DNA of 64,000 bases, from assembly GCA_026770705.1 (NCBI GenBank), contig JANJGN010000121.1:372001-436000 (forward strand), given 5' to 3'. The notes under the pieces were generated by a model. The model had not been told where the DNA came from, searched no databases, and was given only the letters and a program-made list of their open reading frames with translations. Positions 3,117 to 64,000 of this stretch are shown one piece after another. The position numbers were made by a program, and so were the translations under genes. The DNA is from Isurus oxyrinchus. Taxonomy: Eukaryota. Position 1 is the stretch's first letter. Each line of letters begins with the position of its first letter.

Positions 3117-3482
3117 CAGAAACGTGAAGCTGGGTTACAGGATAGTAGCTGTATTTATTTCTGCTGTCAAATTCTATTCTGAAAAAATAAGGTCCTTCAT
3201 CTTCCCGTCTGATGTTGTTTATAATCAGGGAACAGTCACCATCTTTCAGGTCTCCAGACAGCCGGGTCCGATGGTGGAACCGTGGTAACTCGTGACTGTG
3301 ATCCTTGGAGTGAAAGGCTATAGACGATGTTCTCCATTCCTCATTATTAAACCAGATTGCAACTCGTGGTTGCTTTTCCAAATGTGATGGATAACTGTAA
3401 TGACATGGAATCTGTACACAGGAACCTTCCTGCGCTGTCACCTCTCGTGGAGTGTCACCTTTCCACTCTTGTGACAGTCCAA
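3117..3482 (-). CDS. Siglec-like gene A, V-set sialic-acid-binding domain exon
   Basis: ccacag|TT acceptor, TCTG|gtaagt donor, 366 nt; QEW...GSCVQIPC...GDCSLIINN...GPYFFRIE...NKYSY, i.e. Siglec Cys pattern and F-strand Arg. Confidence 0.92.
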
Positions 3483-7365: not shown

Positions 7366-7450
7366 CCAGGACCTGTCCGACTGCTCGCCTGGGGAGGAAC
7401 TGCCCACACGCTCTGCTTGGGCTGAATGACCTCTTCCTGTGCTGCTCCCT
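7366..7450 (-). other. 85-nt putative non-coding first/5'UTR exon of gene A
   Basis: Strong CTGG|gtaagt donor; homologous copy lies upstream of the leader exon in genes A, B, C and D. Confidence 0.6.
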
Positions 7451-7493
7451 CTGTGTATTTAATTAGAAAGGGCTGATGTGTCACTGTGAGATA

Positions 7494-27563: not shown

Positions 27564-27932
27564 CAGAAATGTGAAGCCGGGTTACAGGGTAATAGTTATG
27601 GCTCGGACCATTGTCAAATTCTATTCTGAAAAAATAAGGTCCTTCATCTTCCCGTCTGATGTTGTTTATAATCAGGGAACAGTCGCCATCTTTCAGGTCT
27701 CCAGACAGCTGGGTCCGATGGCGGAACCTTGGTAACTCGTGACTGTGATCCTTGGAGTGAAAGGCAAAGGGATTGTCGAATTTGTGTTTCTCGTTATTAA
27801 ACCAGATTCCGACTCGTGGTTGGCTTTCCAAATGTGCTGGATAACTGTAATGACACGGAATCTGTACACACGAACCTTCCTGCGCTGTCACCTCTTGTGG
27901 AGTGTCACCTTTCCACTCTTGTGACAGTCCAA
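27564..27932 (-). CDS. Gene B V-set Siglec domain exon
   Basis: 369 nt, intact; CVQIPC, GDCSL, GPYFFRIE. Confidence 0.92.
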
Positions 27933-27994
27933 CTGGGGAGAGAAATATCTATATTTAATTCTGGATCCTCAATGTCAACTGAATCTTCATTGTC

Positions 27995-28922: not shown

Positions 28923-29348
28923 CGTCCACTCTCAGGTATTTCATTGGCTCTCAAACTGTGATAGAGAAAGGAGTTAATGAGACCTCACCTCTTGTCCGAC
29001 AGCTCTCGAGAGATCAGAACTGCTTTTAGACAATGTCTTCACAGACCTAATTTGACTCTCTGTGGGATGATAGGTGCTCTGTAGAGAGTTACAAGGCTTT
29101 AAGGAAGAAAAACAACGATGAACTTGCATATCTTTAGCACCTTTCACCACCTCAGGATGCCCCAAGCTCATGTCCCTTGAGCTAGAAAGATGTTCTGTAC
29201 GACAGACTTGAGCCTCACACTCGGATCTCAATAATCAGTAGAAATCTTTCAAAGGCATCAATCATTGGAATCTGTCTTTATAAAGTCACAACATCAACAA
29301 AGGACGGTGTTGGTGGTGGAAGTGAATTCCAATCGTTCCGTTACTTAC

Positions 29349-29433
29349 CCAGGACCTGTCCGACTGCTCGCCTGGGGAGGAACTGCCCACACGCTCTGCT
29401 TGGGCTGAATGACCTCTTCCTGTGCTGCTCCCT
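29349..29433 (-). other. 85-nt putative first/5'UTR exon of gene B
   Basis: Homologous to 7366-7450. Confidence 0.6.
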
Positions 29434-29719
29434 CTGTGTATTTAATTAGAAAGGGTTGATGTGTCTCTGTGAGACAAAATGAGGAAGTCAGATCAAAGTG
29501 ACAGAGCAGCTGATGTTTTGAGTTTTTTGAAGCTGTTAACCCTTTGCGTTCTGGACTTGTGATGATATTTCTGCTCAAAAGTGGAAAGTCATTGACCAGG
29601 AATTTCTCCTGTGGGTCACTGGGTTTCGAACCCTCTCTCACTCTCTGAGTGGATGGTCACCTGTTCGAGATTCATTTGGCAAAATTCAGGCTGGCAAACC
29701 AGATCAGCACTCAGTGTCA

Positions 29720-30357
29720 GGACTGAGAGTCCTGCACAATCGGAGGGTCAGTACTGAGAGAGAGCTGCACTGTTGGAGGGTGAGTATTGAGGGAGTGCTG
29801 CATAGTCAGAGGGTCAGTACTGAGGGAGTGCTGCAAGGTCAGAGGGTCAGTGCTAAGAGAGAACTGCACTGTCAGAGGGTCAGTACAGAGGGAGTGCTGC
29901 ACAATCGGAGCGTCAGTACTGAAGGAGTGCTGCACTGTCAGAGGGTCAGTACTGAGGGAGTACTGCACTGTTGGAGGGTCAGTACTGAGGGACTGTTGCA
30001 CTGTGAGAGGGTCAGTACAGAGGTAGAGCTGCACTGTCAGAGGGTCAGTACTGAGGGAGTGCTGCACTGTCAGAGGGTCAGTACTGAGACAGAGCTGCAC
30101 TGTCAGATGGTCAGTACTGAGGGAGTGTTGCACTGTGGGAGGGTCAGTACTGAGAGAGTGCTGCACAGTCGGAGGGTCAGTACTGAGGGAGTGCTGCACA
30201 ATCGGAGGGTCAGTACTGAGGGAGTGCTGCACGGTCGGAGGGTCAGTACTGAGGGAGAGCTGCACTTTCGGAGGGTCAGTACTGAGGGAGTGCTGCACTG
30301 CTGGAGGGTCAGTACCGAGGGAATGCTGCACTGTCGCAGGCTCAGTACCGAGGGAAT
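29720..30357. repeat. 33-bp tandem repeat array (reverse orientation)
   Basis: Unit GAGGGTCAGTACTGAGGGAGTGCTGCACTGTCA. Confidence 0.95.
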
Positions 30358-30419
30358 GTAAACCGAACCCATTGGTCAACTAAAATAGTGACAAGGGTTG
30401 AATAAACTGGTGATGAGGT

Positions 30420-35851: not shown

Positions 35852-35987
35852 ATGGGAAAAAGTTTAATCACATTCGGACACAGCCTTGGCACTCCAAGGG
35901 TTAACAGTTTGCTTTCATACTTTGACAGCAACCACCTCCCACTTTGTCTCACAGTGACACATCCACCCTTTCTCATTAAATACACAG

Positions 35988-36072
35988 AGGGAGCAGCACA
36001 GGAAGAGGTCATTCAGCCCAAGCAGAGCGTGTGGGCAGTTCCTCCCCAGGCGAGCAGTCGGACAGGTCCTGG
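35988..36072 (+). other. Extra copy of the 85-nt exon, not followed by a leader exon
   Basis: Homology to 40084-40168; following intron is cut by the 33-bp array at ~36165. Confidence 0.65.
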
Positions 36073-36164
36073 GTAAGTAACGGAACGATTGGAATTCACT
36101 TCCACCACCAACACCGTCCTTTGTTGATGTTGTGACTTTATAAAGAGAGATTCCAATGATTCAC

Positions 36165-38396
36165 AGTTCAGCACTCCCTCAGTACTGACCCTCTGACAGT
36201 GTAGCACTTCCTCAGTTCTCACCCTCTGACAGTGCAGCACTCCCTCAGTACTGAACTTCTGGCAGTGCAGCACTCCCTCAGTACTGACCCTCTGACAGTG
36301 CAGCACTCCCTCAGTACTGACCCTCTGACAGTGCAGCACTCCATCAATACTGACTCTCTGACAGTGCAGCACTCCCTCAGTACCGAACTTCTGGCAGTGC
36401 AGCACTCCCTCAGTACTGACCCTCTGACAGTGCAGCACTTCCTCAGTTCTCACCCTCTGACAGTGCAGCACTCCCTCAGTACTGAACTTCTGGCAGTGCA
36501 GCACTCCCTCAGTACTGACCCTCTGACAGTGCAGCACTTCCTCAGTTCTCACCCTCTGACAGTGCAGCACTCCCTCAGTACTGACCCTCTGACAGTGCAG
36601 CACTCCCTCAGTACTGACCCTCTGACAGTGCAGCACTCCCTCAGTACTGAACTTCTGGCAGTGCAGCACTCCCTCAGTACTGACCCTCTGACAGTGCAGC
36701 ACTCCCTCAATACTGACCCTCTGACAGTGCAGCACTCCCTCAATACTGACTCACTGACAGTGCAGCACTTCTTCAGTTCTGACCCACCGATAGTGAAGCA
36801 ATCCCTCAGTACTGACTCTCTGACAGTGCAGCACTCCCTCAGTACTGAACTTCTGGCAGTGCAGCACTCCCTCAATACTGACCCTCTGACAGTGCAGCAC
36901 TCCCTCAATACTAACTCACTGACAGTGCAGCACTCCCTCAGTACTGACCTTATGACAGTGCAGCACTCCCTCACTTCTGACCCTCTGACAGTGCAGCACT
37001 CCCTCAATTCTGACCCTCTTACTGTGCAGCACTCCCTCAGTACTGACCCTCTTACAGTGCAGCACTCCCTCAATACTGACCCTCTGACAGTGCAGCATTG
37101 CTTCAGTACTGACCCTCTTACTGTGCAGCACTCCCTCAGTACTGACCCTCTGACAGTGCAGCACTCCCTCAGTACTGACCCACCGATAGTGCAACACTCC
37201 CTCAGTACTGAACTTCTGGCAGTGCAGCACTCCCTCAGTACTGACCCTCTGACAGTGCAGCATTGCTTCAGTACTGACCCTCTGACAGTGCAGCACTCCC
37301 TCAGTAATGACCCTCTGACAGTGCAGCACTCCCTCAGTACTGACCCTCTGACAGTGCAGCACTCCCTCAGTACTGACCCTCTGACAGTGCAGCACTCCCT
37401 CAGTACTGACCCTCTGACAGTGCAGCACTCCCTCAGTAATGACCCTATGACAGTGCAGCACTCCCTCAGTACTGACCCTCTGACAGTGCAGCACTCCCTC
37501 AGTAATGACCCTATGACAGTGCAGCACTCCCTCAGTACTGACCCTCTGACAGTGCAGCACCCCCTCAGTACTGACCCTCTGACAGTGCAGCACTCCCTCA
37601 GTACTGACCCTCCGACAGTGCAGCACTCCCTCAGTACTGACCCTCTGACAGTGCAGCACCCCCTCAGTACTGACCCTCTGACAGTGCAGCACTCCCTCAG
37701 TACTGACCCTCTGACAGTGCAGCATTCCCTCAGTACTGACTCTCTGACAGTGCAGCACTCCCTCAGTACTGACCCTCTGACAGTGCAGCACTCCCTCAGT
37801 ACTGACCCTCTGACAGTGCAGCACCCCCTCAGTACTGACCCTCTGACAGTGCAGCACTCCCTCAGTACTGACCCTCTGACAGTGCAGCACTCCCTCAGTA
37901 CTGACCCTCTGACAGTGCAGCACTCCCTCAGTACTGATCCTCCGACAGTGCAGCACTCCCTCAGTACTGACCCTCTGACAGTGCAGCACTCCCTCAGTAC
38001 TGACCCTCTGACAGTGCAGCACTCCCTCAGTACTGACCCTCTGACAGTGCAGCACTCCCTCAGTACTGACCCTCTGACAGTGCAGCACTCCCTCAGTACT
38101 GACCCTCTGACAGTGCAGCACCTCTTCAGTACTGACCCTCTGACAGTGCAGCACTCCCTCAGTACTGACCCTCTGACAGTGCAGCACTCCCTCAGTACTG
38201 ACCCTCTGACAGTGCAGCACTCCCTCAGTACTGACCCTCTGACAGTGCAGCACTCCCTCAGTACTGACCCTCTGACAGTGCAGCACTCCCTCAGTACTGA
38301 CCCTCTGACAGTGCAGCACTCCCTCAGTACTGACCCTCTGACAGTGCAGCACTCCCTCAGTACTGACCCTCTGACAGTGCAGCACTCCCTCAGTAC
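36165..38396. repeat. Large 33-bp tandem repeat array (~2.2 kb)
   Basis: Unit CAGTGCAGCACTCCCTCAGTACTGACCCTCTGA; source of the 724-aa and 489-aa ORFs. Confidence 0.98.
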
Positions 38397-39406
38397 AGGG
38401 TCCTGAATCGTTGGAAGTCTCTCCTTAATCCTTGGGTGTGGAGGATCTCAGAGACTCTCATGTAATTGAGAAGTCACCATGAGCACAGCAGCAGTCAGAA
38501 TAGACAGATCTACAACCCAACACTCACACTTGCTGCACAGTTTCACCACCAAACCACAAGAATTAAGCAAACTGGCTGAAAATAAAGAGATGACAATTCA
38601 GCCTGTGTGGAAAGGTCAGAAGTTTATTGTTTCCTGTTTGTCTCTGATCTGCAGCGCAGATAAATATTAGAAAACCACAGAATCAAACAGCACAGAAAGA
38701 GGCCACTCAGCCCATTGTCCCTGTCCTGGTCTCCTGGGACAGATATCCAATTGGTCCCAATCTCCCATTCTCTCACACTCTGCAAGTATTTTGAAAGATC
38801 CTATTGAATCTGCTTCCACCGCGTTTTCAGGCAGCACCTTCCAGATCACAGCAACTCGCTGTGTACAATAAAACCTAACCTGCCTGCTCAGTGATGGTTA
38901 CTCCCATCTGAGGGGATTTATATTCATGAATTTGGATTCAATCTGGAACAGGAAGAATTTGAAGGACGATGGGGGAAGAGAGGTGGATTGAAACCAATTG
39001 TGTGCTTCTTTTAAAGAGCTAGCACAGCCAAGATGGCATGAATGGCCTCCTGCTATTCTGTGTGATTCTGTGATATGATGAAGAAAGTTCCTTTTCAGCA
39101 ACAGTTTACCTCTTCTGCTGAAACTCTTCATGTTGGAGAAGAGGAAGTGATGGTTTCCATCAGCGTTTAGTGTGTGTTCCAGTTCAGTTTTAACCGAAAC
39201 TCAGTGAAGCGGATGGTGAAGGTCATGAACCCACCACAGCGGCACCTCCAACACATGCAGAGTTCAGGCTAGAGGCGCTTTGTTAGTGTGTTTCACAGTG
39301 TCTGCTGGAGTAGGGTCAGTGCTGAGCTTGGGGACAAGTCAGTCTACAATGCTGCATCGGAATCAACAATACAACAATATGGGGTTTGGATCAGAAATAA
39401 TTTGAT

Positions 39407-39790: not shown

Positions 39791-40083
39791 CAGTCCTGAC
39801 ACCGAGTGCCGGTCTGGTTTGGCAGTCTGAATTTTGCCAAATGAATCTCGAACAGACGACCTTCTCACTCAGACAGCGAGAGAGGGTTTGAAACCCAATG
39901 ACCCACAGGAGAAATTCCTGGTCAATGACTTTCCACTTTTGAGCAGAAATATCATCACAAGTCCAGAACACAAAGGGTTAACAGCTTCAAAAAACTCTAA
40001 ACATGAGCTGCATCCTCACAAAGTGACCACTTCCACATTTTGACTCACAGTGACACATCAACCCTTTCTAATTAAACACACAG

Positions 40084-40168
40084 AGGGAGCAGCACAGGAA
40101 GAGGTCATTCAGCCCAAGCAGAGCGTGTGGGCAGTACCTCCCCAGGCGAGCAGTCGGACAGGTCCTGG
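40084..40168 (+). other. 85-nt putative first/5'UTR exon of gene C
   Basis: CTGG|gtaagt donor; ETS-like ACTTCC and AP-1 TGACTCA (40041-40047) just upstream. Confidence 0.6.
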
Positions 40169-42164: not shown

Positions 42165-42533
42165 TTGGACTGTCACAAGAGTGGAAAGGTGACACTCCCC
42201 GAGAGGTGACAGCGCAGGAAGGTTCGTGTGTACAGATTCCATGTCATTACAGTTATCCATCACATTTGGAAAGCCAACCGCGAGGTGGAGTCTGGTTTAA
42301 TAATGAGAAACAGATTCCCTGGGCTCCCATTGCCTTTCACTCCAAGGATCACAGTCACGAGTTACCACGGTTCCACCATCGGACCCGGCTGTCTGGAGAC
42401 CTGAAAGATGGCGACTGTTCCCTGATTATAAACAACATCAGACGGGAAGATGCAGGACCTTATTTTTTCAGGATAGAATTTGACAATGGTCCGAGCCATA
42501 ACTATTACCCTGTAACCCAGCTTCACGTTTCTG
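42165..42533 (+). CDS. Gene C V-set Siglec domain exon
   Basis: 369 nt, intact; GPYFFRIE. Confidence 0.92.
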
Positions 42534-47100: not shown

Positions 47101-47222
47101 AGAGGCAGGAAAGTTGAGTTGAGGATTGTCAGATCAGCCATGGTGTCATTGAATGGCGGAGCAGAGTTGATTGGCCGAATGGCCTCCTTCTGCTCTGACG
47201 TCTTGTGGTCTTATGGTCTTAT
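44168..47222 (+). mobile_element. Near-complete CR1 ORF2 (endonuclease plus RT, disrupted) with 3' tail, inserted in a 33-bp array
   Basis: LNAHSIWNK...DLIAIMETW (APE); NYRPVSLTSV; YLDFQK; LYKALVRPHLEYC; TCTTATGG-type tail. Confidence 0.92.
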
Positions 47223-47223
47223 C

Positions 47224-48468
47224 ACCCTCCGACAGTGCAGATCTCCCTAATTACTGACCCTCCAACAGTGCAGCACTCCCTCAGTACTGACCCTCTGGCA
47301 GTGCAGCATTCCCTAAGTATTGACCCTCCAACAGTGCAGCACTCCCTCAGTACTGACCCTCCAACAGTGCAGAGCTCCCTAATTACTGACCCTCCGACAG
47401 TGCAGCACTCCCTCAGTACTGACCCTCCGACAGTGCAGCATTCCCTAAGTACTGACCCTCCGAGAGTGCAGCACTCTTCCAGTACTGGCCCTCCAACAGT
47501 GCAACACTCCCCTAGTACTGACCCTCCAACAGTGCAGCACTCCCTCAGTACTGACCCTCCAACAGTGCAGCACTCCCTCAGTACTGACCCTCTGACAGTG
47601 CACCACTCCATCAGTACTGACCCTCCGACAGTGCAGCACTCCCTCAGTACTGATCTTCCAACAGTGCAGCAGTCCATCAGTACTGACCCTCCGACAGTGC
47701 ACCACTCCCTCAGTCCTGATCCTCCAACAGTGCAGCACTCCCTCAGTACTGATCCTCCAACAGTTCAGCACTCCCTCAGTACTGATTCTCTGACAGTGAA
47801 GTACTTGCTCAGTACTGACTATGCGGCAGTGCAGCTTTCACAGTACCTGCCCTCCAACAGTGCAGCAGGTCATCAGTACTCACGCGCCAAGAGGGCAGCT
47901 CTCCCTCAGTACTGACCCTCCCACAGTGCAGCACTACCTCAGTACTGACCCTCCAACAGTGCAGCAATCCATCAGTACTGACCCTCCAACAATACAGCAC
48001 TCCCTCAGTACTGAACTGAAGTGTCTGCCTGAATTAAGTGCTTTGTGGTGAAGGAACCTACATTGATATCACACCTTTCACATTCTCAGGGTCCCTCTTC
48101 AGTACTGACCCTCTGACAGTGCAGCATTGCTTCAGTACTGACTCTCTTACAGTGCAGCACTCCCTCAGTACTGACCCTCTGACAGTGCAGCACTCCCTCA
48201 ATACTGACCCTCTGACAGTGCAGCATTGCTTCAGTACTGACCCTCTGACAGTGCAGCACTCCCTCAGTACTGACCCTCTGACAGTGCAGCACTCCCTCAG
48301 TACTGACTCTCTGACAGTGCAGCACTCCCTCAGTACTGACCCTCTGACAGTGCAGCACTCCCTCAGTACTGACCCTCTGACAGTGCAGCACTCCCTCAGT
48401 ACTGACCCTCTGACAGTGCAGCACTCCCTCAGTACTGACCCTCTGACAGTGCAGCACCTCTTCAGTAC
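47224..48468. repeat. 33-bp tandem repeat arrays (47224-48012 and 48095-48468)
   Basis: Same unit. Confidence 0.95.
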
Positions 48469-49477
48469 AGGGTCCTGAATCTTTGGAAGTCTCTCCTTAA
48501 TCCTTGGGTGTGGAGGATCTCAGAGACTCTCATGTAATTGAGAAGTCACCATGAGCACAGCAGCAGTCAGAATAGACAGATCTACAACCCAACACTCACA
48601 CTTGCTGCACAGTTTCACCACCAAACCACAAGAATTAAGCAAACTGGCTGAAAATAAAGATGACAATTCAGCCTGTGTGGAAAGGTCAGAAGTTTATTGT
48701 TTCCTGTTTGTCTCTGATCTGCAGTGCAGATAAATATTAGAAAACCACAGAATCAAACAGCACAGAAAGAGGCCACTCAGCCCATTGTCCCTGTCCTGGT
48801 CTCCTGGGACAGATATCCAATTGGTCCCAATCTCCCATTCTCTCACACTCCGCAAGTATTTTGAAAGATCCTATTGAATCTGCTTCCACCGCCCTTTCAG
48901 GCAGCACCTTCCAGATCACAGCAACTCGCTGTGCACAATAAAACCTAACCTGCCTGCTCAGTGATGGTTACTCCCATCTGAGGGGATTTATATTCATGAA
49001 TTTGGATTCAATCTGGAACAGGAAGAATTTGAAGGACGATGGGGGAAGAGAGGTGGATTGAAACCAATTGTGTGCTTCTTTTAAAGAGCTAGCACAGCCA
49101 AGATGGCATGAATGGCCTCCTGCTATTCTGTGTGATTCTGTGATATGATGAAGAAAGTTCCTTTTCAGCAACAGTTTACCTCTTCTGCTGAAACTCTTCA
49201 TGTTGGAGAAGAGGAAGTGATGGTTTCCATCAGCGTTTAGTTTGTGTTCCAGTTCAGTTTTAACCGAAACTCAGTGAAGCGGATGGTGAAGGTCATGAAC
49301 CCACCACAGCGGCACCTCCAACACATGCAGAGCTCAGGCTAGAGGCGCTTTGTTAGTGTGTTTCACAGGGTCTGCTGGAGTAGGGTCAGTGCTGAGCTTG
49401 GGGACAAGTCAGTCTACAATGCTGCATCGGAATCAACAATACAACAATATGGGGTTTGGATCAGAAATAATTTGATC

Positions 49478-50025: not shown

Positions 50026-50307
50026 ACACACCACAGAATCTCTCAATTAATTCTCTTGATATGATTAACGCTTCATCAATCAATATAATTGAGGGGAATT
50101 CTGCAGTGATAATCTGCTCCGTCGAGAGCTTCCCAGCTTCTAACCTGACGTGGCGACATCTTAATGTCCCAATGAACAGAACAAGTTCCAACAATGAGCT
50201 GTGGTTGGTGATTCCTCACGTTACATCCAGGGACACTGGAGACTATCAGTGTGTGGCAGAGAATGAACATGGAGCAGTGGAGGGGTTCATAACCATCACT
50301 GTGGAAC
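50026..50307 (+). CDS. Gene C third Ig domain exon
   Basis: 282 nt, ttttcag|AC ... GAAC|gtgagt; DTGDYQCVAEN. Confidence 0.9.
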
Positions 50308-50344
50308 GTGAGTTACACAGAATTGAACGTTCTCTTGTTGTTAG

Positions 50345-51380: not shown

Positions 51381-51573
51381 CTGTTATATGTGAATCCTCC
51401 TTATAGAAACCTGCATGTACATGGATATTATCAATAAATATTACATAGATAAATGTTATTTGTATAGACCTTTCATGCATAGACAATATCACTTCACAAG
51501 TTCAGAATTACTACATGTACACAGGGAACCATTCTCAAACTGTACCGGAGTCATTCATTGGCTGATTTTACAG

Positions 51574-51670
51574 GGCGAGATTCCAATGAATGGAAAGCAG
51601 GATTGCTTGGAGCTGGAATCTGTTTGAGTGTTGGACTGAGTGGATTCTTCATCTTCAAGTGTGTGAGAAA
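51574..51670 (+). CDS. Gene C transmembrane exon (RDSNEWKAGLLGAGICLSVGLSGFFIFKCVRK)
   Basis: ttttacag|GG ... GAGAAA|gtaagt, 97 nt, paralogous to the gene B TM exon. Confidence 0.88.
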
Positions 51671-51984
51671 GTAAGTGTGAAGGTTTAATTGGTTGTTTTT
51701 GAAAATGTTTTCTTCAAACTTCTCTCCTTATAGAAAGAACTTGCATTTCTATAGCACCTTTCACAACCCAAAACCCTTCACAGCCCCTGAAGAGCTTTGA
51801 TGTTCACCTACTGTTTAACATCTCATCCAACATTCACTGTTTCACAACTCAGTCCTGTAACAGGCAGTGTTGACCCGGACCATAAGATACCTTGTGACCT
51901 ACTGAGGATGTGAAAGGAGCTATATAAATGAAAACCTTTCTTTTGTTAGTGAATGCAATCTCTTTCCTCTTTCCATGTTTCATT

Positions 51985-52135: not shown

Positions 52136-52424
52136 CCTCCTACACGTTGTTCAGTCTCTCACATTTTTAAGGAGCGCTGAGCAACATCTGCTCCTTCAGA
52201 AGATCCACCTCAACAGCTGGATTGAGCAGTGAATTGAAACTCGCTCAACGACTGCTCAGCTTTACACAGGAATCACGTCACAGAGTCAGGACACAAAGGG
52301 TTAACAGTTTGTTTACAACACAACACTAAGGCCCTACGTTTCAGTGAAAGGGTTTTCACAATTGTTCCCCAATTCCTGATTTTACTCACAGAGACACATC
52401 AACCCTTTCTCATTAAACACACAG

Positions 52425-52509
52425 AGGGAGCAGCACAGGAAGAGGTCATTCAGCCCAAGCAGAGTGTGTGGGCAGTTCCTCCCCAGGCGAGCAGTTGGAC
52501 AGGTACTGG
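52425..52509 (+). CDS. Gene C putative first cytoplasmic exon (GSSTGRGHSAQAECVGSSSPGEQLDRYW), a copy of the 85-nt exon
   Basis: 85 nt gives phase 2->0, the bridge needed between the TM exon and 53024; open frame; acceptor is weak. Confidence 0.5.
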
Positions 52510-52679
52510 GTAAGTAACGGAACGATTGGAATTCACTTCCACCACCAACACCGTCCTTTGTTAATGTTGTGACTTTATATATAATCAGATTCCAATGATT
52601 GATGCCTTTGAAAGATTTCTACAGATTATTGAGATCTGGGTGTGAGGCTCAGGTCTGTTGTACAGAACATCTTTCTGGT

Positions 52680-53128: not shown

Positions 53129-53261
53129 GTGAGTCACACACCACAGGATCCCCAGCCTCTCAGCTGCTCCAGTAGCCTGGTTATTGATATGGCTGCTCCA
53201 GTCCTGTATCTGCAATGTTTTATACAGTCACTCCCAAACCCAACCAAACTCACACCCAACA

Positions 53262-54503
53262 CCGTTCAGAATCAATAATCAAACCCCGTTCAGTATCAAT
53301 AATCAAACCCCGTTCAGTATCAATAATCAAACCCCGTTCAGTATCAATAATCAAACCCCGTTCAGAATCAATAATCAAACCCCGTTCAGAATTAATAATC
53401 AAACACCGTTCAGAATCAATAATCAAACCCCGTTCAGTATCAATAATCAAACCCCTTTCAGAATCAATAATCAAACACTGTTCAGAATCAATAAACAAAC
53501 CCCGTTCAGTATCAATAATCAAACTCCGTTCAGGTTCAATAATCAAACACCGTTTAGAATCAATAATCAAACCCCGTTCAATGTCAATAATCAAACCCCA
53601 TTCAGTATCAATAATCAAACTCCTTTCAGAATCAATAATCAAACCCAGTTCAGTATCAATAATCAAACCCAGTTCAGTATCAATAATCAAACCCCTTTCA
53701 GGATCAATAATCAAACTCCGTTCAGGATCAATAATCAAACACCGTTCAGTATAAATAATCAAACCCTGTTCAGTGTCAATAATCAAAACCCGTTCATAAT
53801 CAATAATCAAACCCCGTTCAGTATCAATAATCAAAACCCGTTCATAATCAATAATCAAACCCCGTACAGTATCAATAATCAAACCCCGTTCAGAATCAAT
53901 AATCAAACCCCGTTCAGTGTCAATAATCAAACCCCGTTCAGTATCAATAATCAAAACTCGTTCATAATCAATAATCAAACCCCGTACAGTTTCAATAATC
54001 AAACCCCGTTCAGAATCAATAATCAAACCCCGTTCAGTGTCAATAATCAATCCCCGTTCAGTATCAATAATCAACCCCCGATCAGTATCAATAATCAACC
54101 CCCGTTCAGTATCAATAATCAAACCCCGTTCAGTATCAATAATCAACCCCCGTTCAGTGTCAATAATCAAACCCCATTCAGTAACAATAATCAAACCCCG
54201 TTCAGTATTAATAATCAAACCCCGTTCAGTATCAATAATCAAACCCCGTTCAGTATCAATAATCAAACCCCGTTCAGAATCAATAAACAAATCCCATTCA
54301 GTATCAATAATCAAACCCCGTTCAGTATCAATAATCAAACCCCGTTCAGTATCAATAATCAAACCCCGTTCAGTATCAATAATCGAACCCCGTTCAATAT
54401 TAATAATCAAACCCCGTTCAGTATCAATAATCAAACCCTGTTCAGTATCAATAATCAAACCCCATTCAGTGTCAATAATCAAACCCTGTTCAGTGTCAAT
54501 AAT
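53262..54503. repeat. 24-bp minisatellite (~50 copies)
   Basis: Unit ATCAATAATCAAACCCCGTTCAGT. Confidence 0.98.
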
Positions 54504-54599
54504 TAATGTATGTATTGTGGGTGGAATTTTCGATTTGGATCAATAATACTAAACACTGATCACTCTGATTGTCACTGATCATTTCTGTTTCTATTACAG

Positions 54600-57574: not shown

Positions 57575-57790
57575 CTCGAGCCTGGTACACAGGAACTGGG
57601 GAAGGCCAATTCAGCCCCTTTAGCCTTTTACACAGGAACAGGAGGAGGCCCACTCAGCCCCTCGAGCCTATAACACAGGAACAGGAGGAGGCCCATTCAG
57701 CCCCCTCAAGCCTGTTACACAGGAATAGGAGGAGGCCCATTCAGCCCCATCAAGCCTGTTACACAGGAACAGGAGGAGGCCCATTCAGCC
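57575..57790. repeat. 43-44-bp minisatellite, continuation
   Basis: Same unit; last unit fuses into the 85-nt exon (donor at 57844). Confidence 0.9.
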
Positions 57791-57917
57791 CAAGCAGAGC
57801 GTGTGGGCAGTTCCTCCCCAGGCAAGCAGTCAGACAGGTCCTGGGTAAGTAACGGATCGATTGGAAATCACGGGGGAAGTTCTGAGGGCTCCTAACACAT
57901 TGTCCTGTCTTCTAAAT

Positions 57918-58200: not shown

Positions 58201-60628
58201 CTGGGGAGTTTCAGTCTACTCTGTGGGGCAGACGTCCCCTGAATGGGGTCTTGAATCCCACAATGTTCAGAGCCCCTGAATTTGGCTGTGAAACCCACTG
58301 ACCCACAGGAGAAACTCCTGGTCAATGACTGTCCACCTCTGAGCAGAAATATCACCACAGAGTCAGGACACAAACGGTTAACAGTTCACCAAGATCTCAA
58401 AACATGAGCGTCTTGAGGTGGTGAAAGGTGCTATAGAAATGCAAATCCTTCAATGTTCTTCTTTCTTAAAGCCTTGTAACTCTCTGCAGAGCACCTATCA
58501 TCCCACAGAGAATCAAATTAGTCTGTGAAGACATTGTCTAAAAGCAGTTCTGATCTCTCGAGAGCATTCGGACAAGAGGTGACGTCTCATTAACTCCTTT
58601 CTCTTTCACAGCTTGAGAGTGAGAAGTGGATGGAATATCTGGGAGTGGACGATGATCGGGAAATCTACTTCCTCTTGTCACTTTCCCAAGGTAATATCAT
58701 CATCAGCTCAGACAGAATTATGTTTAACAGTCTTTGTAAAAGATCATTCTTATCTCTTAATCTCTGAAACCTCCTGCAACTCAACCAAACAACTTCCCAG
58801 ATCTCTGTGTTACTGCAATTCCGGCCTCTTGACCATCCCCCGATTCCCATCAATCCAATACTGGCGGCCGTGCCTTCAGCTGCCTGGGGCCTGAGCTCTG
58901 GAATTCACTCCCTAAACCTCGGGGATGGAGGAGATCAGAGGGTTTCATTTTACTGACAATCACCACGGCCACATCACAGCTGCAGTGAGAATAGACAGAG
59001 AGTCCAGCCCTCACTCTTCCTGCACAGTTTCACCATAGCAACCACAATATGGAAATTTAAAAATACTGAAAGTTAAACCGAAACCAAGCCAGTCAGTTTA
59101 GAGAGATGAGATGTTTACACAGTTTCTCTGTGTATCTTGTAGACACTGTGTTGGGTGGAAGACTGGCTTCACTAAACAGGGTCCTGAGGACCATGAGCCA
59201 ATGTAGAATGAACTTGTCCACTCCTGTGTCCAGGATTCTCTTCCATCCATTGTGAAACCTTGGGGAGTTCCATGTGTGTCCTGTAGATGGTCCACACTGC
59301 AGCCACTGTGCCCCAGTGATGGAGGGGGTGGATATCGAGTCTAGTGGATCTACAAACCTTCCAGAGTTAAATATTGATATTTCTCTCCCCACTTGGACTG
59401 TCACAAGAGTGGAAAGGCGACACTCCACGAGAGGTGGCAGCGCAGGAAGGTTCCTGTGTACAGATTCCATGTCATGACAGTTAATCATCACATTTCGTAG
59501 GGAGATCACGTGTCGGAATCTGGTTGACAGGAATAGATGGGAACCCTACAGCCTAAATGGTCTATAGCCTTTCACTCCGAGGGTCACAGTCACAGGGATC
59601 AAAGATTCCGCCATCGTACCCGGCTGTCTGGAGACCTGAAAAATGGCGACTGTTCCCTGATTATAAACAACATCAGACGGAAAGATGCAGGACCTTATTT
59701 TTTTCAGAATAGAATTTGACAGCAGGAATAGTTAAAGCTACTATCCTGTAACCCAGCTTCACGTTTCTGGTAAGTGCTGTGTTATAATTACTCAACAATT
59801 CACATTCAACACTCAATGGGAAATAACACAAACTGTGACGTTTACATATTAACACAAAACACAGCTTATTATAACTTGCTATCTGATTCTCAATAACCTG
59901 GTGATAGCTTCCAGTTCAGCCCTAAAGCAACCTCTAATACTCACTTTAATATCAATGATGAAAAGCATTAACTGTATTATCAGGTTATCCATTCCCATCA
60001 ATCTCTCCTGTCCTGTTTAAAAGTCTGACGTATCGATAAAAGAAAGATGTGCATTTCTGCAGCGCAATTTACCACCTCAGGAGGATCCAAATCCCTTCAC
60101 AGCCAATGAAATTATTCCTGAATTGTAGTCACAGATGTAAAACACAGCAGTCAGTTTGTGCACAGCAAGATCCAACAAACCACAATGTAATAAATCACCC
60201 AGATCACTGAGGAAATGAGAAGCCAGTGAACTCAAACCTCTGGTCTGATGAAGAGTCATACAGACTTGAAACGTTAACCCTGTCTTCCTCTCCACTGATA
60301 CTGTCAGACCTGCTGAGTCTTTCCAGCAATTTTTGTTTTTGTTTCAGATTTCCAGCATCCGCAGTATTCTGCTTTTAACTCCAATCTCTGGACTGAGCCT
60401 CTTCTCTCATCCAGTATTCTCAATTCACATGTCTCGGAGTGAACGTGTATTAAGCTGAGAGACAGAAACACTACTGCCAAAGAGCAAGAAAATCTCTCCT
60501 GATCATTGTAACCTCTCAGTTCTGATATCATCCTTGTAAAAGTGCTTTCTCTTGTGGGACTGTGATTTCTATTTGAACTGATGCTTCACGTTATATTTGT
60601 CTAAAAGGATCCATTCTCTGTCTGTTAG

Positions 60629-60925
60629 ATTTCACAGATAAACCCACGATATTCCCTGCTGAAATTATTGCAGGAAAGCGTGTGGATGTAAGCTGCACCT
60701 TCAACACAACGTGCAATGGAACAGCAGCACCTGTCTTAACCTGGGACACTCCCACTGACGTACCTGGATCAGTCTCAAACACTGTAACTCAGCATGGTGT
60801 CACTCTGACCTATACTTCTGTTCTGACCCTGATCCCATCACTCAAACACCACGGACACACTCTCAGCTGCCGAGTGAGATATCCATCTGTTTCATCGGAG
60901 CGGACCCTCGTACTAACAGTGCAAG
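60629..60925 (+). CDS. Gene D C2-set Ig exon (still intact)
   Basis: 297 nt, open, ttag|AT ... CAAG|gtaatt. Confidence 0.65.
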
Positions 60926-63070
60926 GTAATTACATACACCTTTCATTCTACATCAGCACTCCCTCAGCGCAGACCCTCTGACAGTGCAGCCCGTTCTCAG
61001 TGTCCACATTCTAAGGCCTCTCTAAGTGCTTCAAAGTCGATAGAATTTAATTGATCTTTATTTGATTATTGCTGAATGAAGAGACAAGCTGTCTAAACTT
61101 TACATCTCGCACACACCATTCTCCATGGCAACACCTCCACCTATCAGAGTCCACTTGCCAACCAATCAGCACTCTCTTCCCATTAAGTATAAATTGTTGT
61201 TCACTTTCTGTTGATAATCCTGTGAACGGGCTTCTTGATTCCTGCCATGACATCTGAATGTCCAAATGAACAGAACAAGTTCCAACAATGAGCTGTGGTT
61301 GGTGATTCCTCATGTTACATCCAGGGACACTGGAGACTATCAGTGTGTGGCAGAGAATGAACATGGAGCAGTGGATGGGTTCATAACCATCAGTGTGGAA
61401 CGTGAGTTACACAGACTTCAACATCTCTCTCAGATTTGAACACTACACAAACACCATCGAACATACACACCTAAATAGACACGTGCAGACACACATATAT
61501 GACCACACACAAAGACACACTCACACACAAACACTAACACTCACTCCCTCATGGGTTACCTGACCTCCCTCAGTACTGCACTGGAGAGTTGGCCTGAATT
61601 CTGGGATTTGTGTTCCCATTCATATTTATGGAAGAATATGGAAATTACTATTACAGACACTCAGATGCATAGAGGCTCTCACAGATACTCTCTGCGTCTC
61701 CAACTCTCTCTCTCCTTTTAAGAAGCTTCCTGAAACCTAACCCTTTGACGAATCACCAACCTAATTCTTCCTTATCTGATTCTGTGTGATTTTCTTTGTG
61801 TATCTGAGAGTAAGAGAGAGTTGGAGAGGTTTAGGAAGAGAATTCCTGCTGGTGAAAAGCTTACATAATGTTCTCACTATTTCCGTGCACATAATTCCCA
61901 TTATGTGCAATGCCCCTGTTTATAATGATGACTGCCTATGTAAACGTCACGCTGTAGTTACAGCCTCCCACCAGTGGTGGCATTGTAGCCCTTCATCCTT
62001 GTGTTTCCCAGCTTTCCCAGCAACTCCACTTCCCAGTTTGCTATACAAGCTGTGAGTTCATCGGAATTCAATTATTTCTCAAACGGTAGATTTGATGTCA
62101 TTTTATTGAAAACTTCCTCAGCGCCTCCCTGAAGGGTTTACACTCTCTGGGAAGCAGGAATAGGCTGGATGTTGGGGAGTTCATCTTTTCCCAGAGAGCA
62201 GTGATCCTCGGGAATGTGCTGTCAGTGGGTGTGGTGGTTGCTGTTTCTCTGTCGCCTTCAAGAGGGATCTGGAGTGGTTACTGACTGGGGGAGAGATCAT
62301 GGAAGCGGAGAATGATACAGCACAGGAGGAGGCCATTCAGCCCATTGAGCCTGTGCCAGGTCTTTCAATGTTCTATCCCATCAGATCCACTAACCACCAC
62401 TCCACTTTGCCCCCATCTTCCTCCTTCAAGTGTTTATCCAATTTCCCTTTTGAAAGTTCCTATTGAATCTGCTTCCACTGCCCTTTCAGGCAGAACCTTC
62501 CAGATCACAACAACTCGCTCTGTCAAAACAAATTCTCCTCATCTCCCCCTCCGGTTCGTCAATCTGTGTCCCTCTGGTTACCGACCCTCCTGCCCCTTAA
62601 ATACATCGATACTGTTCACCTCGACCACTCCCTGTGGGAGCGAGTTCCACATTCTCCCCTCTCTCTGGGTAAAGATTGGAACTGTTTATTAAGCGGGGGG
62701 TGTAAGTCCATGGGGGAGTCCATCTCGATCTTGCCCGATTCGCACACGCGTCCGAGATGGATTTCTACCCTGCACTAAACGTTTCCAGAATTTTCTACAG
62801 CACAATCCTGTACACAGCGATGGAGAGAAACATTGGACAGGGAGTCCAACAGCACAATGATCCATTCTCACCAATGTTCCACGCTAAGGGGAAAGTTCCG
62901 ATTGTCCACTCTTAGAGTGTTTACAATGAAAACATTCATTCCACATTGAATCCCAGTGGATGGGTCAATATTACAGCAAATGTTGCAGTGATATGAAGCT
63001 TGATTGTTCAGCCAGAGTGAGAGATTGAAAGCGGAGAGTCAGTGATGATTTCTTTCTGTGTGTTCTCTAG

Positions 63071-63210
63071 ACAGTGGAGGAGAGATTCTGCACGTGATCC
63101 TGATCCTGGGAATACGAGCTGTGATATTCCTTGTGGCTGTGGTTATCACTATCGCTGGAGTCTGTGTCTGGGAGAGACAAACAGTGAAAGGAAGTCGACA
63201 GACTGTTTGA
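63071..63210 (+). CDS. Activating-type TM and short-tail exon (SGGEILHVILILGIRAVIFLVAVVITIAGVCVWERQTVKGSRQTV*)
   Basis: Long pyrimidine tract ...ttctctag|AC, phase 1, hydrophobic helix with Arg (CGA 63115-63117), stop after 12 residues; not in the ORF track. Confidence 0.82.
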
Positions 63211-63229
63211 AGCTTTGTACAAAAACAGT

Positions 63230-63835
63230 CTCATCATGGAACAGAAGGACGGCATTCGGCCCATCGACTCCATGCTGTCTCTCTGTAGAGCAATCCAGTC
63301 AGTCCCATTCCCCCGCTCTATCCCCGTATCCCTTCAAGTTTATTTCCCCTCAAGTGTCCATCCAATTTCCTTTTGAAATCGTTCATCGTCTCCGCTTCCA
63401 CCATCCTCGTAGGCAGCGAGTTCCAGCTCATTACCACTCGCTGTGTAAAAAAGTTCCTCCTCAAATCCCCCCTCTGCCCAAAACCTTCAATCTGTGTCCC
63501 CCAGTCCTTGTACCATCAGCTAATGGCAACAGCTTCTCTTTGTCTACCTGATCTAAACCCATCATCATCTTGTACACCTCGATCAGATCCCCCCTCAATC
63601 TCCTTTGTTCCAAGGAGAACAACCCCAGCTTCTCCAACCCAACCTTGTAGCTAAAATCCCTCATCCCTGGACCCATTCTGCTCAATCTCCTCCCCACCCT
63701 CTCAAGGACCCTCACTTCCTTCCCAAAGTGAGGAGACCAGAACTGGACACAATACTCTAGTTGTGACCTAACCAGAGCTTTATAAATGTTCAGCATAACC
63801 TCCCTGTGTTTGTACTCAATCCCTCAATTTATGAA
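63230..63835 (-). mobile_element. CR1 3' fragment
   Basis: LNIYKALVRSQLEYCVQFWSPH...RRLRGDLIEVYK. Confidence 0.9.
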
Positions 63836-64000
63836 AAGCTTATTCTTTCCATCAGCACAAACAGCAATTTCCAAGCGGACTCCCATCAGCAGACAGAGTG
63901 CAATGAAACATCGGCATGCCTGCTTCTTAATGTACGGAGAGAAACCTGGAACGAGAGATTCTCCTTCTTCTCCTCAGCAAGCTGAAACTTTTCCTTATAC

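What the first reader, a model, noticed from the sequence alone, without database searches (positions are those of the whole stretch)
63071..63210. Intact activating-type TM exon (intramembrane Arg, 12-aa tail) hidden from the ORF track
Seen: clean acceptor, then ILHVILILGI-R-AVIFLVAVVITIAGVCVW-ERQTVKGSRQTV-stop, unrelated to the B/C TM exons. Established: a basic TM residue plus a short tail marks receptors that pair with ITAM adaptors (DAP12 for Siglec-14/15/16; FcR-gamma for LILRA, GPVI, NKp46). Inference: an activating Siglec module.
Basis: partly seen in the sequence, partly recalled or inferred. Interest (0 to 1): 0.8.

Follow-up and report, generated by a model that had tools for sequence, protein, structure and literature searches.

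The report
Shark arginine membrane exon, decayed gene
This is a real, spliced copy of a shark exon that gives immune receptors a membrane anchor with a buried arginine and almost no tail, but the gene it closes here has lost its sugar-binding domain, so this copy is an ordinary and partly decayed family member.

Summary
63071-63210 has a clean phase-1 acceptor and encodes the reported peptide, then a stop. It is the most hydrophobic six-frame segment in the window.

It is one copy of a conserved shark cassette. The core ILGIRAxIF is invariant in 11 of 11 aligned sequences. The cassette ends RefSeq-predicted Siglec-like, CD22-like and SLAM-like proteins of eight shark species. White-shark models are 95.7% identical to this copy.

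Contigs of 4 of 4 runs join the C2 exon (ending 60925) to 63071 with GT..AG.

The gene it closes, copy D, is decayed. Its V exon has lost its acceptor and carries stops and a frameshift. Its third Ig exon is truncated, and its usual start codon is out of frame. At best this copy makes a V-less chain of one C2 domain plus the arginine anchor. It is not an intact activating Siglec.

Adaptor coupling is inferred, not shown. The arginine sits near the top of the helix, which favours a zeta/gamma-type partner.

The scan had already followed up at least 12 other copies of this exon in this genome.

The parts
57776..57844 (+). Upstream non-coding-type exon of gene copy D. Copies of the same exon lie upstream of genes A, B and C.
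   Evidence: tblastn of basking-shark models P0022 and P0023 hits 57776-57844. It also hits 7366-7458, 29310-29441, 35980-36111, 40078-40168 and 52417-52548. The boundaries are approximate.
58612..58690 (+). Signal-peptide exon of copy D. It has a 1-nt deletion relative to A, B and C, which puts the usual ATG (MIGKSYFLLSLLQ in the others) out of frame. A D-specific ATG at 58630 reads MEYLGVDDDREIYFLLSLSQ and ends in phase 1.
   Evidence: Alignment A2; translation. D-type contigs without the extra T cover 58665 at depth 385.5 in X1 and 159 in X5. One X6 contig has the T (table 4).
59393..59769 (+). Dead V-set exon of copy D.
   Evidence: AC instead of AG at 59391-92. TAA at 59482-84, with 4 stops in the old frame. 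One extra T in the run at 59698-59704 and a 7-nt insertion. It is 78-83% identical to the V exons of A, B and C, which are 87-93% identical to each other. Every contig in X1, X5 and X6 reads A at 59437, the paralog base, not D's G.
60629..60925 (+). Intact C2-set Ig exon of copy D, phase 1 to phase 1.
   Evidence: Pfam C2-set_2, E 2.2e-9. It differs from the C2 exons of B, C and A by 3, 5 and 6 nt. It is 98% identical to white-shark P0096 and P0097.
61249..61401 (+). Remnant of the third Ig exon of copy D: only the 3' half, with a broken frame. It is skipped in RNA.
   Evidence: blastn matches only 61249-61419 to C 50155-50324 and B 21826-21986. 61018-61204 is a high-copy repeat, with 11-35 contigs per run at 61142. 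All four runs read C at 61313 where D has T. A loose end at 61249 in X6 continues as intact paralog sequence.
63071..63210 (+). The finding: the last coding exon. It holds a TM helix with Arg15, a 12-residue tail, and a stop at 63208-10. In contigs the exon runs on at least to 63227.
   Evidence: Joint 60923->63069 (cut +2, GT..AG) in X1, X5, X6 and X7.
63228..63850 (+). 623-nt block of transposon-like sequence after the stop. It is absent from the X6 and X7 contigs. Its first part is present in X1, with a 14-nt gap.
   Evidence: table 8 record 28; joints 63216->63851 and 63231->63246. The skipped ends are GT..CC, so it is not a canonical intron. A LINE-like ORF lies at 63461-63796(-). There is repeat similarity to 62423-62549.
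63851..64000 (+). Continuation of the 3' untranslated part. It runs past the window end.
   Evidence: X7 record 28 (850 nt) covers 63851-64000 with 1 other letter and has 245 more letters beyond the window.

Best explanation
63071-63210 is a real, transcribed copy of a conserved elasmobranch 'ILGIRA' cassette. The cassette is a phase-1 last coding exon that supplies a single membrane helix with an invariant arginine in its upper third and a 5-13-residue tail without tyrosine.

How the cassette works (inferred). The buried arginine must be neutralised by a pair of acidic residues in a dimeric signalling chain. The receptor therefore reaches the surface and signals only when bound to that chain. 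With Arg at about position 5 of a 23-residue helix, and polar residues one turn above it in several members, the most likely partner is a zeta/gamma-type dimer (an RDD assembly, as in CD89 or NKp46). A DAP12-type chain is less likely.

This copy. The exon closes gene copy D. D keeps an intact C2 exon and the cassette, and the two are spliced together. D has lost its V-set exon and its third Ig exon, and its usual start codon has been shifted out of frame. It therefore cannot make a sialic-acid-binding activating Siglec. If translated from its own upstream ATG, it would make a protein of about 165 residues with one C2 domain and the arginine anchor, without a V domain. Otherwise its RNA is unproductive.

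Shown: exon, frame, conservation, splicing, decay of the neighbouring exons. Inferred: adaptor coupling, choice of adaptor, translation.
For: Exon and frame.

Hydrophobicity: top of 27 segments.

Conservation:
- 9 of 10 HMMER hits carry the module.
- ILGIRA is present in 15 of the 103 proteins stored at the time, from 8 shark species.
- 12 columns are invariant in 11 of 11 aligned modules, including I-L-G-I-R-A, I-F and C-V.
- White-shark P0017 and P0018 are 95.7% identical over 46 residues.

The cassette sits on three ectodomain types. The sources name them Siglec/CD33-like, CD22-like and SLAM family member 9-like.

Splicing:
- The joint from 60925 to 63071 is GT..AG and appears in 4 of 4 runs from 4 studies and 2 organisms. 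The shorter side is 29, 30, 56 and 159 letters.
- Joint contig depths are 399.5, 146.2, 182.9 and 86.8.
- Intron-containing contigs or bins have depths of 48.3, 7.24, 2.6-4 and 2.79.
- All listed joints behind the exon start after the stop.

Decay of D.

Frame logic for the V-less product, done by hand. ATG 58630 to 58690 is 20 codons plus 1 nt. The C2 exon is 2 + 98 codons + 1. The cassette is 2 + 45 codons + stop.

V-less models (signal exon joined directly to C2) exist in white-shark RefSeq as P0096 and P0097. One X7 contig joins a signal exon directly to a C2 exon, and X7 shows no depth on the V exon.

Rule for the position of the arginine: PMC13107469, passages read.
Against: - No adaptor was tested. 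A 2014 survey found no FcR-gamma chain in shark genomes (PMC4016189, passages read), so the partner is unknown.
- The runs are only guessed to be RNA, and they are contigs.
- All four runs read A at 60871 where the window has C. The intron-spanning X1 contig differs at 13 of 644 letters. The genome holds many sister copies. The joints may therefore come from a near-identical copy or a close relative rather than from this very locus.
- The X7 contig that joins a signal exon to C2 carries the A/C-type exon sequence, not D's.
- The V->C2 joint is seen in X1, X5 and X6 and cannot be assigned to a copy.
- D's N-terminus (MEYLGVDDDREI, then YFLLSLSQ) has an acidic start and a hydrophobic core of only about 8 residues. 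It is a doubtful signal peptide.
- No V-less protein with the cassette was found among proteins of 54-171 residues. Only 1 of 3 candidates passed, P0096, which lacks the cassette.
- Both differences between organisms A and B in the exon change the protein (L10Q, R35G). This gives no sign of purifying selection on this copy.
Confidence: 0.62

Rival explanations
1. Relic exon of a pseudogene. Copy D is dead and its RNA, if any, is unproductive. The cassette and C2 exons are still open only because they are short and are kept similar to their neighbours by gene conversion.
For: The V exon is dead. The third Ig exon is truncated by a repeat. The canonical ATG is out of frame. The C2 exon is 98-99% identical to those of A, B and C, as gene conversion would give. 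Both A/B differences in the exon are non-synonymous. An earlier follow-up called another copy dead (s1-871938).
Against: C2->cassette contigs are far deeper than intron contigs in 4 of 4 runs. D-type signal-exon contigs are deep in X1 (385.5) and X5 (159), and they share the 1-nt deletion across two organisms. An in-frame D-specific ATG exists. Losing the V acceptor forces clean exon skipping that keeps the frame.
Confidence: 0.4
2. The spliced contigs come from a near-identical sister copy, or from the orthologue in a close relative, which has an intact V exon. This very copy is silent.
For: All runs differ from the window at 60871. X1's intron-exon contig is 98% identical. X6 and X7 lack the 623-nt block. 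The scan followed up at least 12 other 140-nt copies in this genome. White-shark models put the same cassette behind an intact V. No run held more than 0.67 of the sampled words.
Against: X7's 850-nt contig has only 2, 2 and 1 other letters in its three pieces (296, 159 and 150 nt). It shares this copy's L10 and R35. X1 contains the beginning of the 623-nt block, which looks specific to this copy.
Confidence: 0.3
3. Borrowed exon.
For: Read-through style models exist in relatives: P0023 runs from a tail into the next gene's exons, and P0016-P0018 hold two V exons. White-shark P0017's complete V differs from gene C's V at 3 of 123 residues by my hand count. Contigs join a V-exon end to a signal-type exon start in X5 and X6 (table 5c).
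Against: The exon joined to the cassette is a C2 exon closest to D's: 2 other letters in 296, against 5 expected for C's. Gene C has its own TM and tail exons up to about 54713. D has its own upstream exons. No listed joint enters 63071 from outside D.
Confidence: 0.1
4. The buried arginine does not recruit an ITAM chain. It serves another end, such as retention and degradation of unassembled chains, pairing with a non-ITAM partner like a DAP10-type chain, or lateral association with another receptor.
For: No adaptor was tested. FcR-gamma was not found in sharks in 2014 (PMC4016189). NKG2D uses a TM arginine for DAP10 (PMC13107469). Neither the exon nor the profile of 11 modules matched any PDB chain meaningfully (0 hits; 1 chance hit at E 3.1).
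Against: An invariant Arg with an invariant neighbourhood across three receptor families, plus a tail too short to signal, is the standard build of adaptor-coupled receptors (rule from PMC13107469 passages). Inhibitory partners with tyrosine-motif tails lie next door.
Confidence: 0.15

Closest known systems
RefSeq-predicted shark proteins that end in the same cassette: white shark P0017, P0018 and P0020; S. canicula P0012 and P0013 ('sialic acid-binding Ig-like lectin 13/14'); S. torazame P0001 and P0002
   Same: The same last exon, 80-96% identical, with the ILGIRAxIF core and a short tail. It is joined to the same type of C2 exon at the same phase...TVQ-D-SGGE....
   Different: Those models hold an intact V-set domain with the YFFRIEFD arginine motif. 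This copy's V exon is dead and its start codon is shifted. They are automatic predictions, and I found no functional study of them.
Human activating Siglecs (Siglec-14, -15, -16), which pair with DAP12/DAP10
   Same: A Siglec-type ectodomain, a basic TM residue, a tail without ITIM, and inhibitory relatives next door with near-identical Ig exons. The general statement comes from PMC7226832, passages read. The paired Siglec-5/14 and 11/16 gene conversion is recalled.
   Different: No sequence relation of the TM exon was shown. Siglec-15 uses a lysine (PMC7226832). Here an arginine sits near the top of the helix. This copy lacks a working V domain. Orthology to mammalian CD33-related Siglecs was not tested.
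CD89 (Fc-alpha-RI), NKp46 and NKp30: receptors with an arginine at the top of the TM helix that assemble with FcR-gamma or zeta dimers (RDD motif)
   Same: Arg in the N-terminal part of the helix. Several cassette members have a polar residue one turn above it: VIQILGIR in white shark, SVHILGIR and SVQILGIR in the SLAM-like members. This resembles QNLIR of CD89 (PMC13107469 passages).
   Different: There is no detectable sequence homology. The assembly is untested. FcR-gamma was reported absent from sharks in 2014 (PMC4016189).
V-less Siglec forms: white-shark models P0096 and P0097, and the human CD33 isoform lacking exon 2 (recalled)
   Same: The signal exon is spliced directly to the C2 exon in frame, giving a receptor without the sugar-binding domain (X7 contig).
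   Different: P0097 carries the inhibitory TM and a tyrosine-motif tail, not the arginine cassette. In D the skipping would be obligatory, because the acceptor is lost, rather than alternative.
Paired activating/inhibitory Ig-superfamily receptors of fishes: skate MDIR, teleost NITR and LITR (all recalled, none read here)
   Same: Clusters of Ig receptors in which some members carry a charged TM residue and a short tail and others carry ITIM tails.
   Different: They belong to other Ig families. The ILGIRA cassette itself was not looked for in them.

Membership tests
Adaptor-coupled (activating-type) immunoreceptor build | Single membrane-spanning helix | tested here: met
   The 21-residue hydropathy mean is 2.95, the highest of 27 six-frame segments at or above 2.0. 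The hydrophobic span I5-W33 is flanked by E4 and E34. No dedicated TM predictor was available.
Adaptor-coupled (activating-type) immunoreceptor build | Basic residue inside the helix | tested here: met
   Arg15 is invariant in 11 of 11 aligned modules and in all 15 stored proteins with the motif.
Adaptor-coupled (activating-type) immunoreceptor build | Short cytoplasmic tail without ITIM, ITSM or ITAM tyrosines | tested here: met
   12 residues after W33, no tyrosine, stop at 63208-10. No listed joint leaves the exon before the stop (62 joints not shown).
Adaptor-coupled (activating-type) immunoreceptor build | Exon is spliced to ectodomain (Ig) exons | tested here: met
   Joint 60925|63071, GT..AG, in 4 of 4 runs. 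Caveats: the runs are contigs of runs only guessed to be RNA, and a sister copy is possible as the source.
Adaptor-coupled (activating-type) immunoreceptor build | Physical, arginine-dependent association with an ITAM chain | not testable with these tools
   This needs co-expression and co-immunoprecipitation. No shark adaptor sequence was at hand.
Siglec (sialic-acid-binding Ig-like lectin) | N-terminal V-set domain with the conserved sialic-acid-binding arginine | tested here: not met
   Copy D's V exon has AC for AG at its acceptor, TAA at 59482-84, a frameshift in the codons of the YFFRIEFD motif, and 4 stops in the old frame. Genes A, B and C keep it (Pfam V-set 5.1e-12 and Ig_CD22 2.9e-9 for C).
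Siglec (sialic-acid-binding Ig-like lectin) | C2-set Ig domain(s) after the V domain | tested here: met
   Pfam C2-set_2, E 2.2e-9, for 60631-60924.
Siglec (sialic-acid-binding Ig-like lectin) | Binding of sialylated glycans | not testable with these tools
   This is a biochemical assay. It is not expected for a V-less product.
Shark ILGIRA membrane cassette (family defined here and in earlier follow-ups of this scan) | Sequence match with the invariant core ILGIRAxIF ... CV | tested here: met
   E 7.2e-14 to 3.9e-4 for 9 proteins. 54-84% identity to the ten typed modules. 95.7% to white-shark P0017 and P0018.
Shark ILGIRA membrane cassette (family defined here and in earlier follow-ups of this scan) | Phase-1 last coding exon at the protein's C-terminus | tested here: met
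   Phase 1 here. The module is C-terminal in 14 of 15 stored proteins. The exception, P0010, has it internally and is probably a mis-joined model.
Paired inhibitory/activating receptor pair (as Siglec-5/14, recalled) | Activating and inhibitory partners share near-identical ligand-binding domains | tested here: not met
   The C2 exons are 98-99% identical. But D's V exon, the ligand-binding part, is dead and only 78-83% identical to those of A, B and C.

The most novel reading that the evidence does not exclude
Copy D is not junk but a deliberately V-less chain. Loss of the V acceptor, a 1-nt deletion and a new upstream ATG (the deletion is shared with white-shark contigs) together preserve an open frame of signal, one C2 domain and the arginine anchor. 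Such a ligand-blind chain would compete for, or chaperone, the limiting signalling dimer. That would tune all receptors of the three families that share the ILGIRA cassette. The cassette itself would be an elasmobranch-wide plug-in that docks on a zeta-type dimer in animals said to lack FcR-gamma.
Probability: 0.12. Interest if true: 0.6.

Novelty: new member of a known kind. Interest (0 to 1): 0.3.

Why it matters
Fish are said to lack CD33-related Siglecs (PMC7226832, teleosts; passages read). A 2014 survey found no FcR-gamma in sharks (PMC4016189; passages read).

A conserved arginine cassette shared by Siglec-like, CD22-like and SLAM-like shark receptors shows that adaptor-coupled activating partners of inhibitory Ig receptors are old. 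It also poses a testable question: which signalling chain do they use?

That point belongs to the family, which this scan has met many times and which automatic annotation already displays. This particular copy adds little beyond that. It shows that cluster members decay exon by exon while the cassette and its neighbouring C2 exon stay open and spliced, and it offers a possible natural V-less form.

Tried and rejected
- Other copies in the window: none found by blastn or tblastn.
- Pfam on the exon peptide: no family.
- PDB sequence search with the exon: 0 hits. With the 11-row profile: one chance hit at E 3.1.
- A V-less protein with the cassette: I searched with the C2 exon, length range 54-171 residues. 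Only P0096 came back (1 of 3 candidates), and it lacks the cassette.
- Cassette census among proteins of 120-383 residues with P0001 region 175-219: 3 of 5 candidates passed. The word index clearly misses members, since P0017, P0018 and P0020 surfaced only. I made no such census for proteins longer than 383 residues.
- Alternative donors inside the exon: 12 GT sites lie before the stop. The best matches 6 of 9 consensus positions (63094), and none is used in the listed joints.
- Reading the 623-nt skip (63228-63850) as an intron: rejected as unproven, because its ends are GT..CC and it consists of transposon-like sequence. I read it as an insertion difference between copies or individuals.
- Literature. 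Searches for Siglec with shark and DAP12, with cartilaginous fish, transmembrane and activating, with elasmobranch, with shark, evolution and fish siglec, and for FCER1G/TYROBP with shark gave no paper on activating shark Siglecs or on shark ITAM adaptors. The whale-shark genome paper only lists Siglecs among Ig families (one passage). Subscription journals and supplements were not seen and may hold such work.
- Naming the species: not done. White-shark models carry exactly the two changes seen in organism-B contigs, so the window is from a close lamniform relative. This is an inference.
- Frames across exons were worked out by hand.

Full report
What is there.

The window is a tandem cluster of Siglec-like genes of a shark. 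It holds four copies:
- A, on the minus strand: V about 3118-3486, C2 1962-2258.
- B, on the minus strand: V about 27565-27933, C2 26345-26638, third Ig about 21835-22110, TM 21262-21360, then tail exons.
- C, on the plus strand: V 42165-42533, C2 43392-43688, third Ig about 50028-50306, TM 51573-51671, tail exons to about 54713.
- D, on the plus strand, which owns the finding.

Pfam calls the V exon of C V-set (5.1e-12) and Ig_CD22 (2.9e-9). It calls the C2 exon of D C2-set_2 (2.2e-9). It finds nothing in the finding's peptide.

The observation.

An AG at 63069-70 behind a pyrimidine tract opens an exon at 63071 in phase 1. It reads SGGEILHVILILGIRAVIFLVAVVITIAGVCVWERQTVKGSRQTV and stops at 63208-10. 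Its hydropathy is the highest of all 27 six-frame segments that reach a 21-residue mean of 2.0. No other copy of it lies in the window, and the TM exons of B and C are unrelated and end in a donor.

It is a family member.

phmmer of the 45 residues against 1.84 billion representatives gave 10 proteins at E<=0.001:
- Nine hold the same module. Eight have it as their last residues and one (P0010) has it internally.
- The tenth (P0008) is a repeat artefact.

Their sources name them CD33-like or Siglec-11, -12 or -13, sialoadhesin-like, CD22-like, SLAM family member 9-like, or hypothetical. They come from Scyliorhinus torazame, Chiloscyllium punctatum, C. plagiosum, Hemiscyllium ocellatum, Rhincodon typus and Mustelus asterias.

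Two more searches added:
- S. canicula 'Siglec-13' and 'Siglec-14 isoform X2' (P0012, P0013), built as signal, intact V, C2 and cassette.
- White-shark P0017, P0018 and P0020.

In all, 15 of the 103 proteins stored at the time hold ILGIRA. In an alignment of the window's module with ten others, 12 columns are invariant, among them I-L-G-I-R-A, I-F and C-V. A stingray protein, P0093, ends in a similar helix (SLAVRGVLF) with a short tail. That is a hint that the design is older than sharks, but it is only one sequence.

It is spliced.

I laid the contigs of four runs, from four studies and two coded organisms, on 58400-64000 at 90% likeness. The runs' kind is only guessed to be RNA.
- All four show a joint from 60923 to 63069. 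With the stated shift of 2, this is exon end 60925 and exon start 63071, and the skipped ends are GT..AG.
- The joint contigs have depths of 399.5, 146.2, 182.9 and 86.8.
- Contigs or bins that contain the intron just upstream have 48.3, 7.24, 2.6-4 and 2.79. That pattern fits spliced RNA with a little precursor.
- In X7 one 850-nt contig covers 60628-60923, 63069-63227 and 63851-64000, and goes on for 245 letters past the window.
- All listed joints downstream of the exon start after the stop (63216, 63227, 63231). Nothing seen reads on into a longer tail. Only 15 joints were listed and 62 were not shown.
- The 623 letters from 63228 to 63850 are transposon-like and their ends are GT..CC. X6 and X7 lack them, and X1 has their beginning. 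I take them for an insertion difference in the untranslated end, not an intron.

Whose RNA?

Organism-B contigs differ from the window in the exon at 63101 (L10 to Q) and 63175 (R35 to G). White-shark models P0017 and P0018 carry exactly these two residues. Organism B therefore behaves like the white shark, and the window comes from a close relative.

Several facts prevent me from tying the contigs to this very copy:
- All four runs read A at 60871 where the window has C.
- X1's contig across the intron-exon border differs at 13 of 644 letters.
- No run held more than 0.67 of the sampled words.
- The scan has followed up at least 12 other 140-letter copies of this exon in this genome.
- D's C2 exon differs from those of B, C and A by only 3, 5 and 6 letters.

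The contigs do show that the C2-to-cassette splice is used by this copy or a near-twin.

The gene it closes is decayed.

The V exon of D, against the V exons of A, B and C:
- AC in place of the acceptor AG (59391-92).
- TAA at 59482-84.
- One extra T in the run inside the codons of the sialic-acid-binding motif.
- A 7-nt insertion.
- Four stops in the old frame.
- 78-83% identity, where A, B and C share 87-93%.
- Contigs laid on it read the paralogs' base at 59437. X7 has no depth there at all.

The third Ig exon survives only as its 3' half (61249-61401), behind a high-copy repeat. The contigs over it read the paralogs' base at 61313. It is skipped by the joint.

The signal exon (58612-58690) lacks one T that A, B and C have. 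The usual start (MIGKSYFLLSLLQ, phase 1) is therefore out of frame. A D-specific ATG at 58630 reads MEYLGVDDDREIYFLLSLSQ and ends in phase 1. Contigs without the extra T cover the site at depth 385.5 in X1 and 159 in X5, so the deleted form is transcribed in both organisms.

By hand, the exon phases fit: 20 codons + 1 nt; then 2 + 98 codons + 1; then 2 + 45 codons + stop. Skipping the dead V exon would give an open frame of about 165 residues.

V-less models, with the signal exon joined directly to C2, exist in white-shark RefSeq (P0096, P0097). One X7 contig joins a signal exon directly to a C2 exon, but its letters are of the A/C type, not D's. A search with the C2 exon found no V-less protein with the cassette.

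How it most likely works.

The cassette has the standard build of a receptor that cannot signal alone: a buried basic residue and a tail of 5-13 residues without tyrosine.

Where the helix starts: the polar residues just before ILGIR in several members (Q or H) suggest that it starts near I11. That puts the arginine at about position 5 of 23.

Passages of a 2026 review (PMC13107469) state that:
- receptors with an arginine near the top of the helix (CD89, NKp46, NKp30, TCR-alpha) assemble with gamma or zeta dimers through a pair of aspartates;
- centrally placed lysines go with DAP12- and CD3-type DxxxT/S chains;
- CD89 has polar residues one turn above its arginine.

On that rule I favour a zeta/gamma-type partner. 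This is inference only. A 2014 survey reported no FcR-gamma homologue in shark genomes (PMC4016189 passages). I could not search for shark adaptors without typing sequence from memory.

Inhibitory neighbours exist. The tail exons of B and C match white-shark and basking-shark models whose tails hold tyrosine motifs, such as TEYAQI in P0097 and SVYGNV in P0022.

Comparison and novelty.

The closest known things are the automatic RefSeq models themselves. By function, the closest are the activating Siglecs of mammals and the arginine-at-the-top receptors of the gamma/zeta group.

Literature searches found no paper on activating shark Siglecs. A teleost study states that fish lack CD33-related Siglecs and that Siglec-15 uses a conserved lysine (PMC7226832 passages). 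Supplements were closed and subscription journals were not searched.

The family is thus unremarked in print as far as I could search, but it is visible in public annotation and this scan has found it repeatedly. This copy is a new, partly decayed member.

Verdict.

- Observation: confirmed.
- Interpretation: partly supported. It is an activating-type module that is real and spliced, but it is not an intact activating Siglec here.
- Interest: 0.3.

Noticed in passing
window 12900-20615 (-): The cytoplasmic tail exons of gene B stand three times in tandem units of about 3 kb. Matches to white-shark P0097 residues 118-180 lie at 14492-14617, 17568-17747 and 20436-20615. Matches to residues 138-254 lie at 12900-13169, 15783-16052 and 18849-19229, with falling identity (78%, 68%, 53%).
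   Followed up: partly
window 58612-58690 (+): D's signal exon combines a 1-nt deletion with a new upstream ATG that restores the frame to the hydrophobic core. Predicted proteins of other sharks (P0003, P0004, P0005) also start at an upstream MKYL... in this exon type.
   Followed up: partly
window 61018-61248: A high-copy repeat (11-35 contigs per run at 61142, summed depths of 1218.1 to 4755.3 across the four runs) replaces the 5' half of D's third Ig exon.
   Followed up: partly
P0093 (Hypanus sabinus, 292 aa), C-terminus: A stingray Siglec-like model ends in a helix with an arginine (SLAVRGVLF) and an 11-residue tail. The arginine cassette design may therefore predate the shark-ray split.
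   Followed up: no
P0096, P0097 (white shark); X7 contig at 58666->60627: V-less forms: the signal exon is spliced straight to the C2 exon, in frame. P0097 continues into an inhibitory TM and a tyrosine-motif tail.
   Followed up: partly
P0016-P0018 (white shark), P0023 (basking shark): These automatic models hold two V exons in a row or run from one gene's tail into the next gene's exons. Together with contigs that join a V-exon end to a signal-type exon start (X5, X6), this suggests read-through between tandem genes or merged models.
   Followed up: no
window 63228-63850: A 623-nt transposon-like block in the untranslated end is present here and, in part, in X1. It is absent from the X6 and X7 contigs. 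Its ends are GT..CC.
   Followed up: partly
window 29714-30380, 36013-38406, 47205-48478 and others: There are long arrays of a 33-nt unit that read as open frames on both strands (LSTDPLTVQHS and similar), up to 724 codons. They are tandem repeats, not genes.
   Followed up: no
window 53184-54546: A second long tandem array (about 27-nt unit, reading NNQTPFSI...) lies between gene C's tail exons.
   Followed up: no
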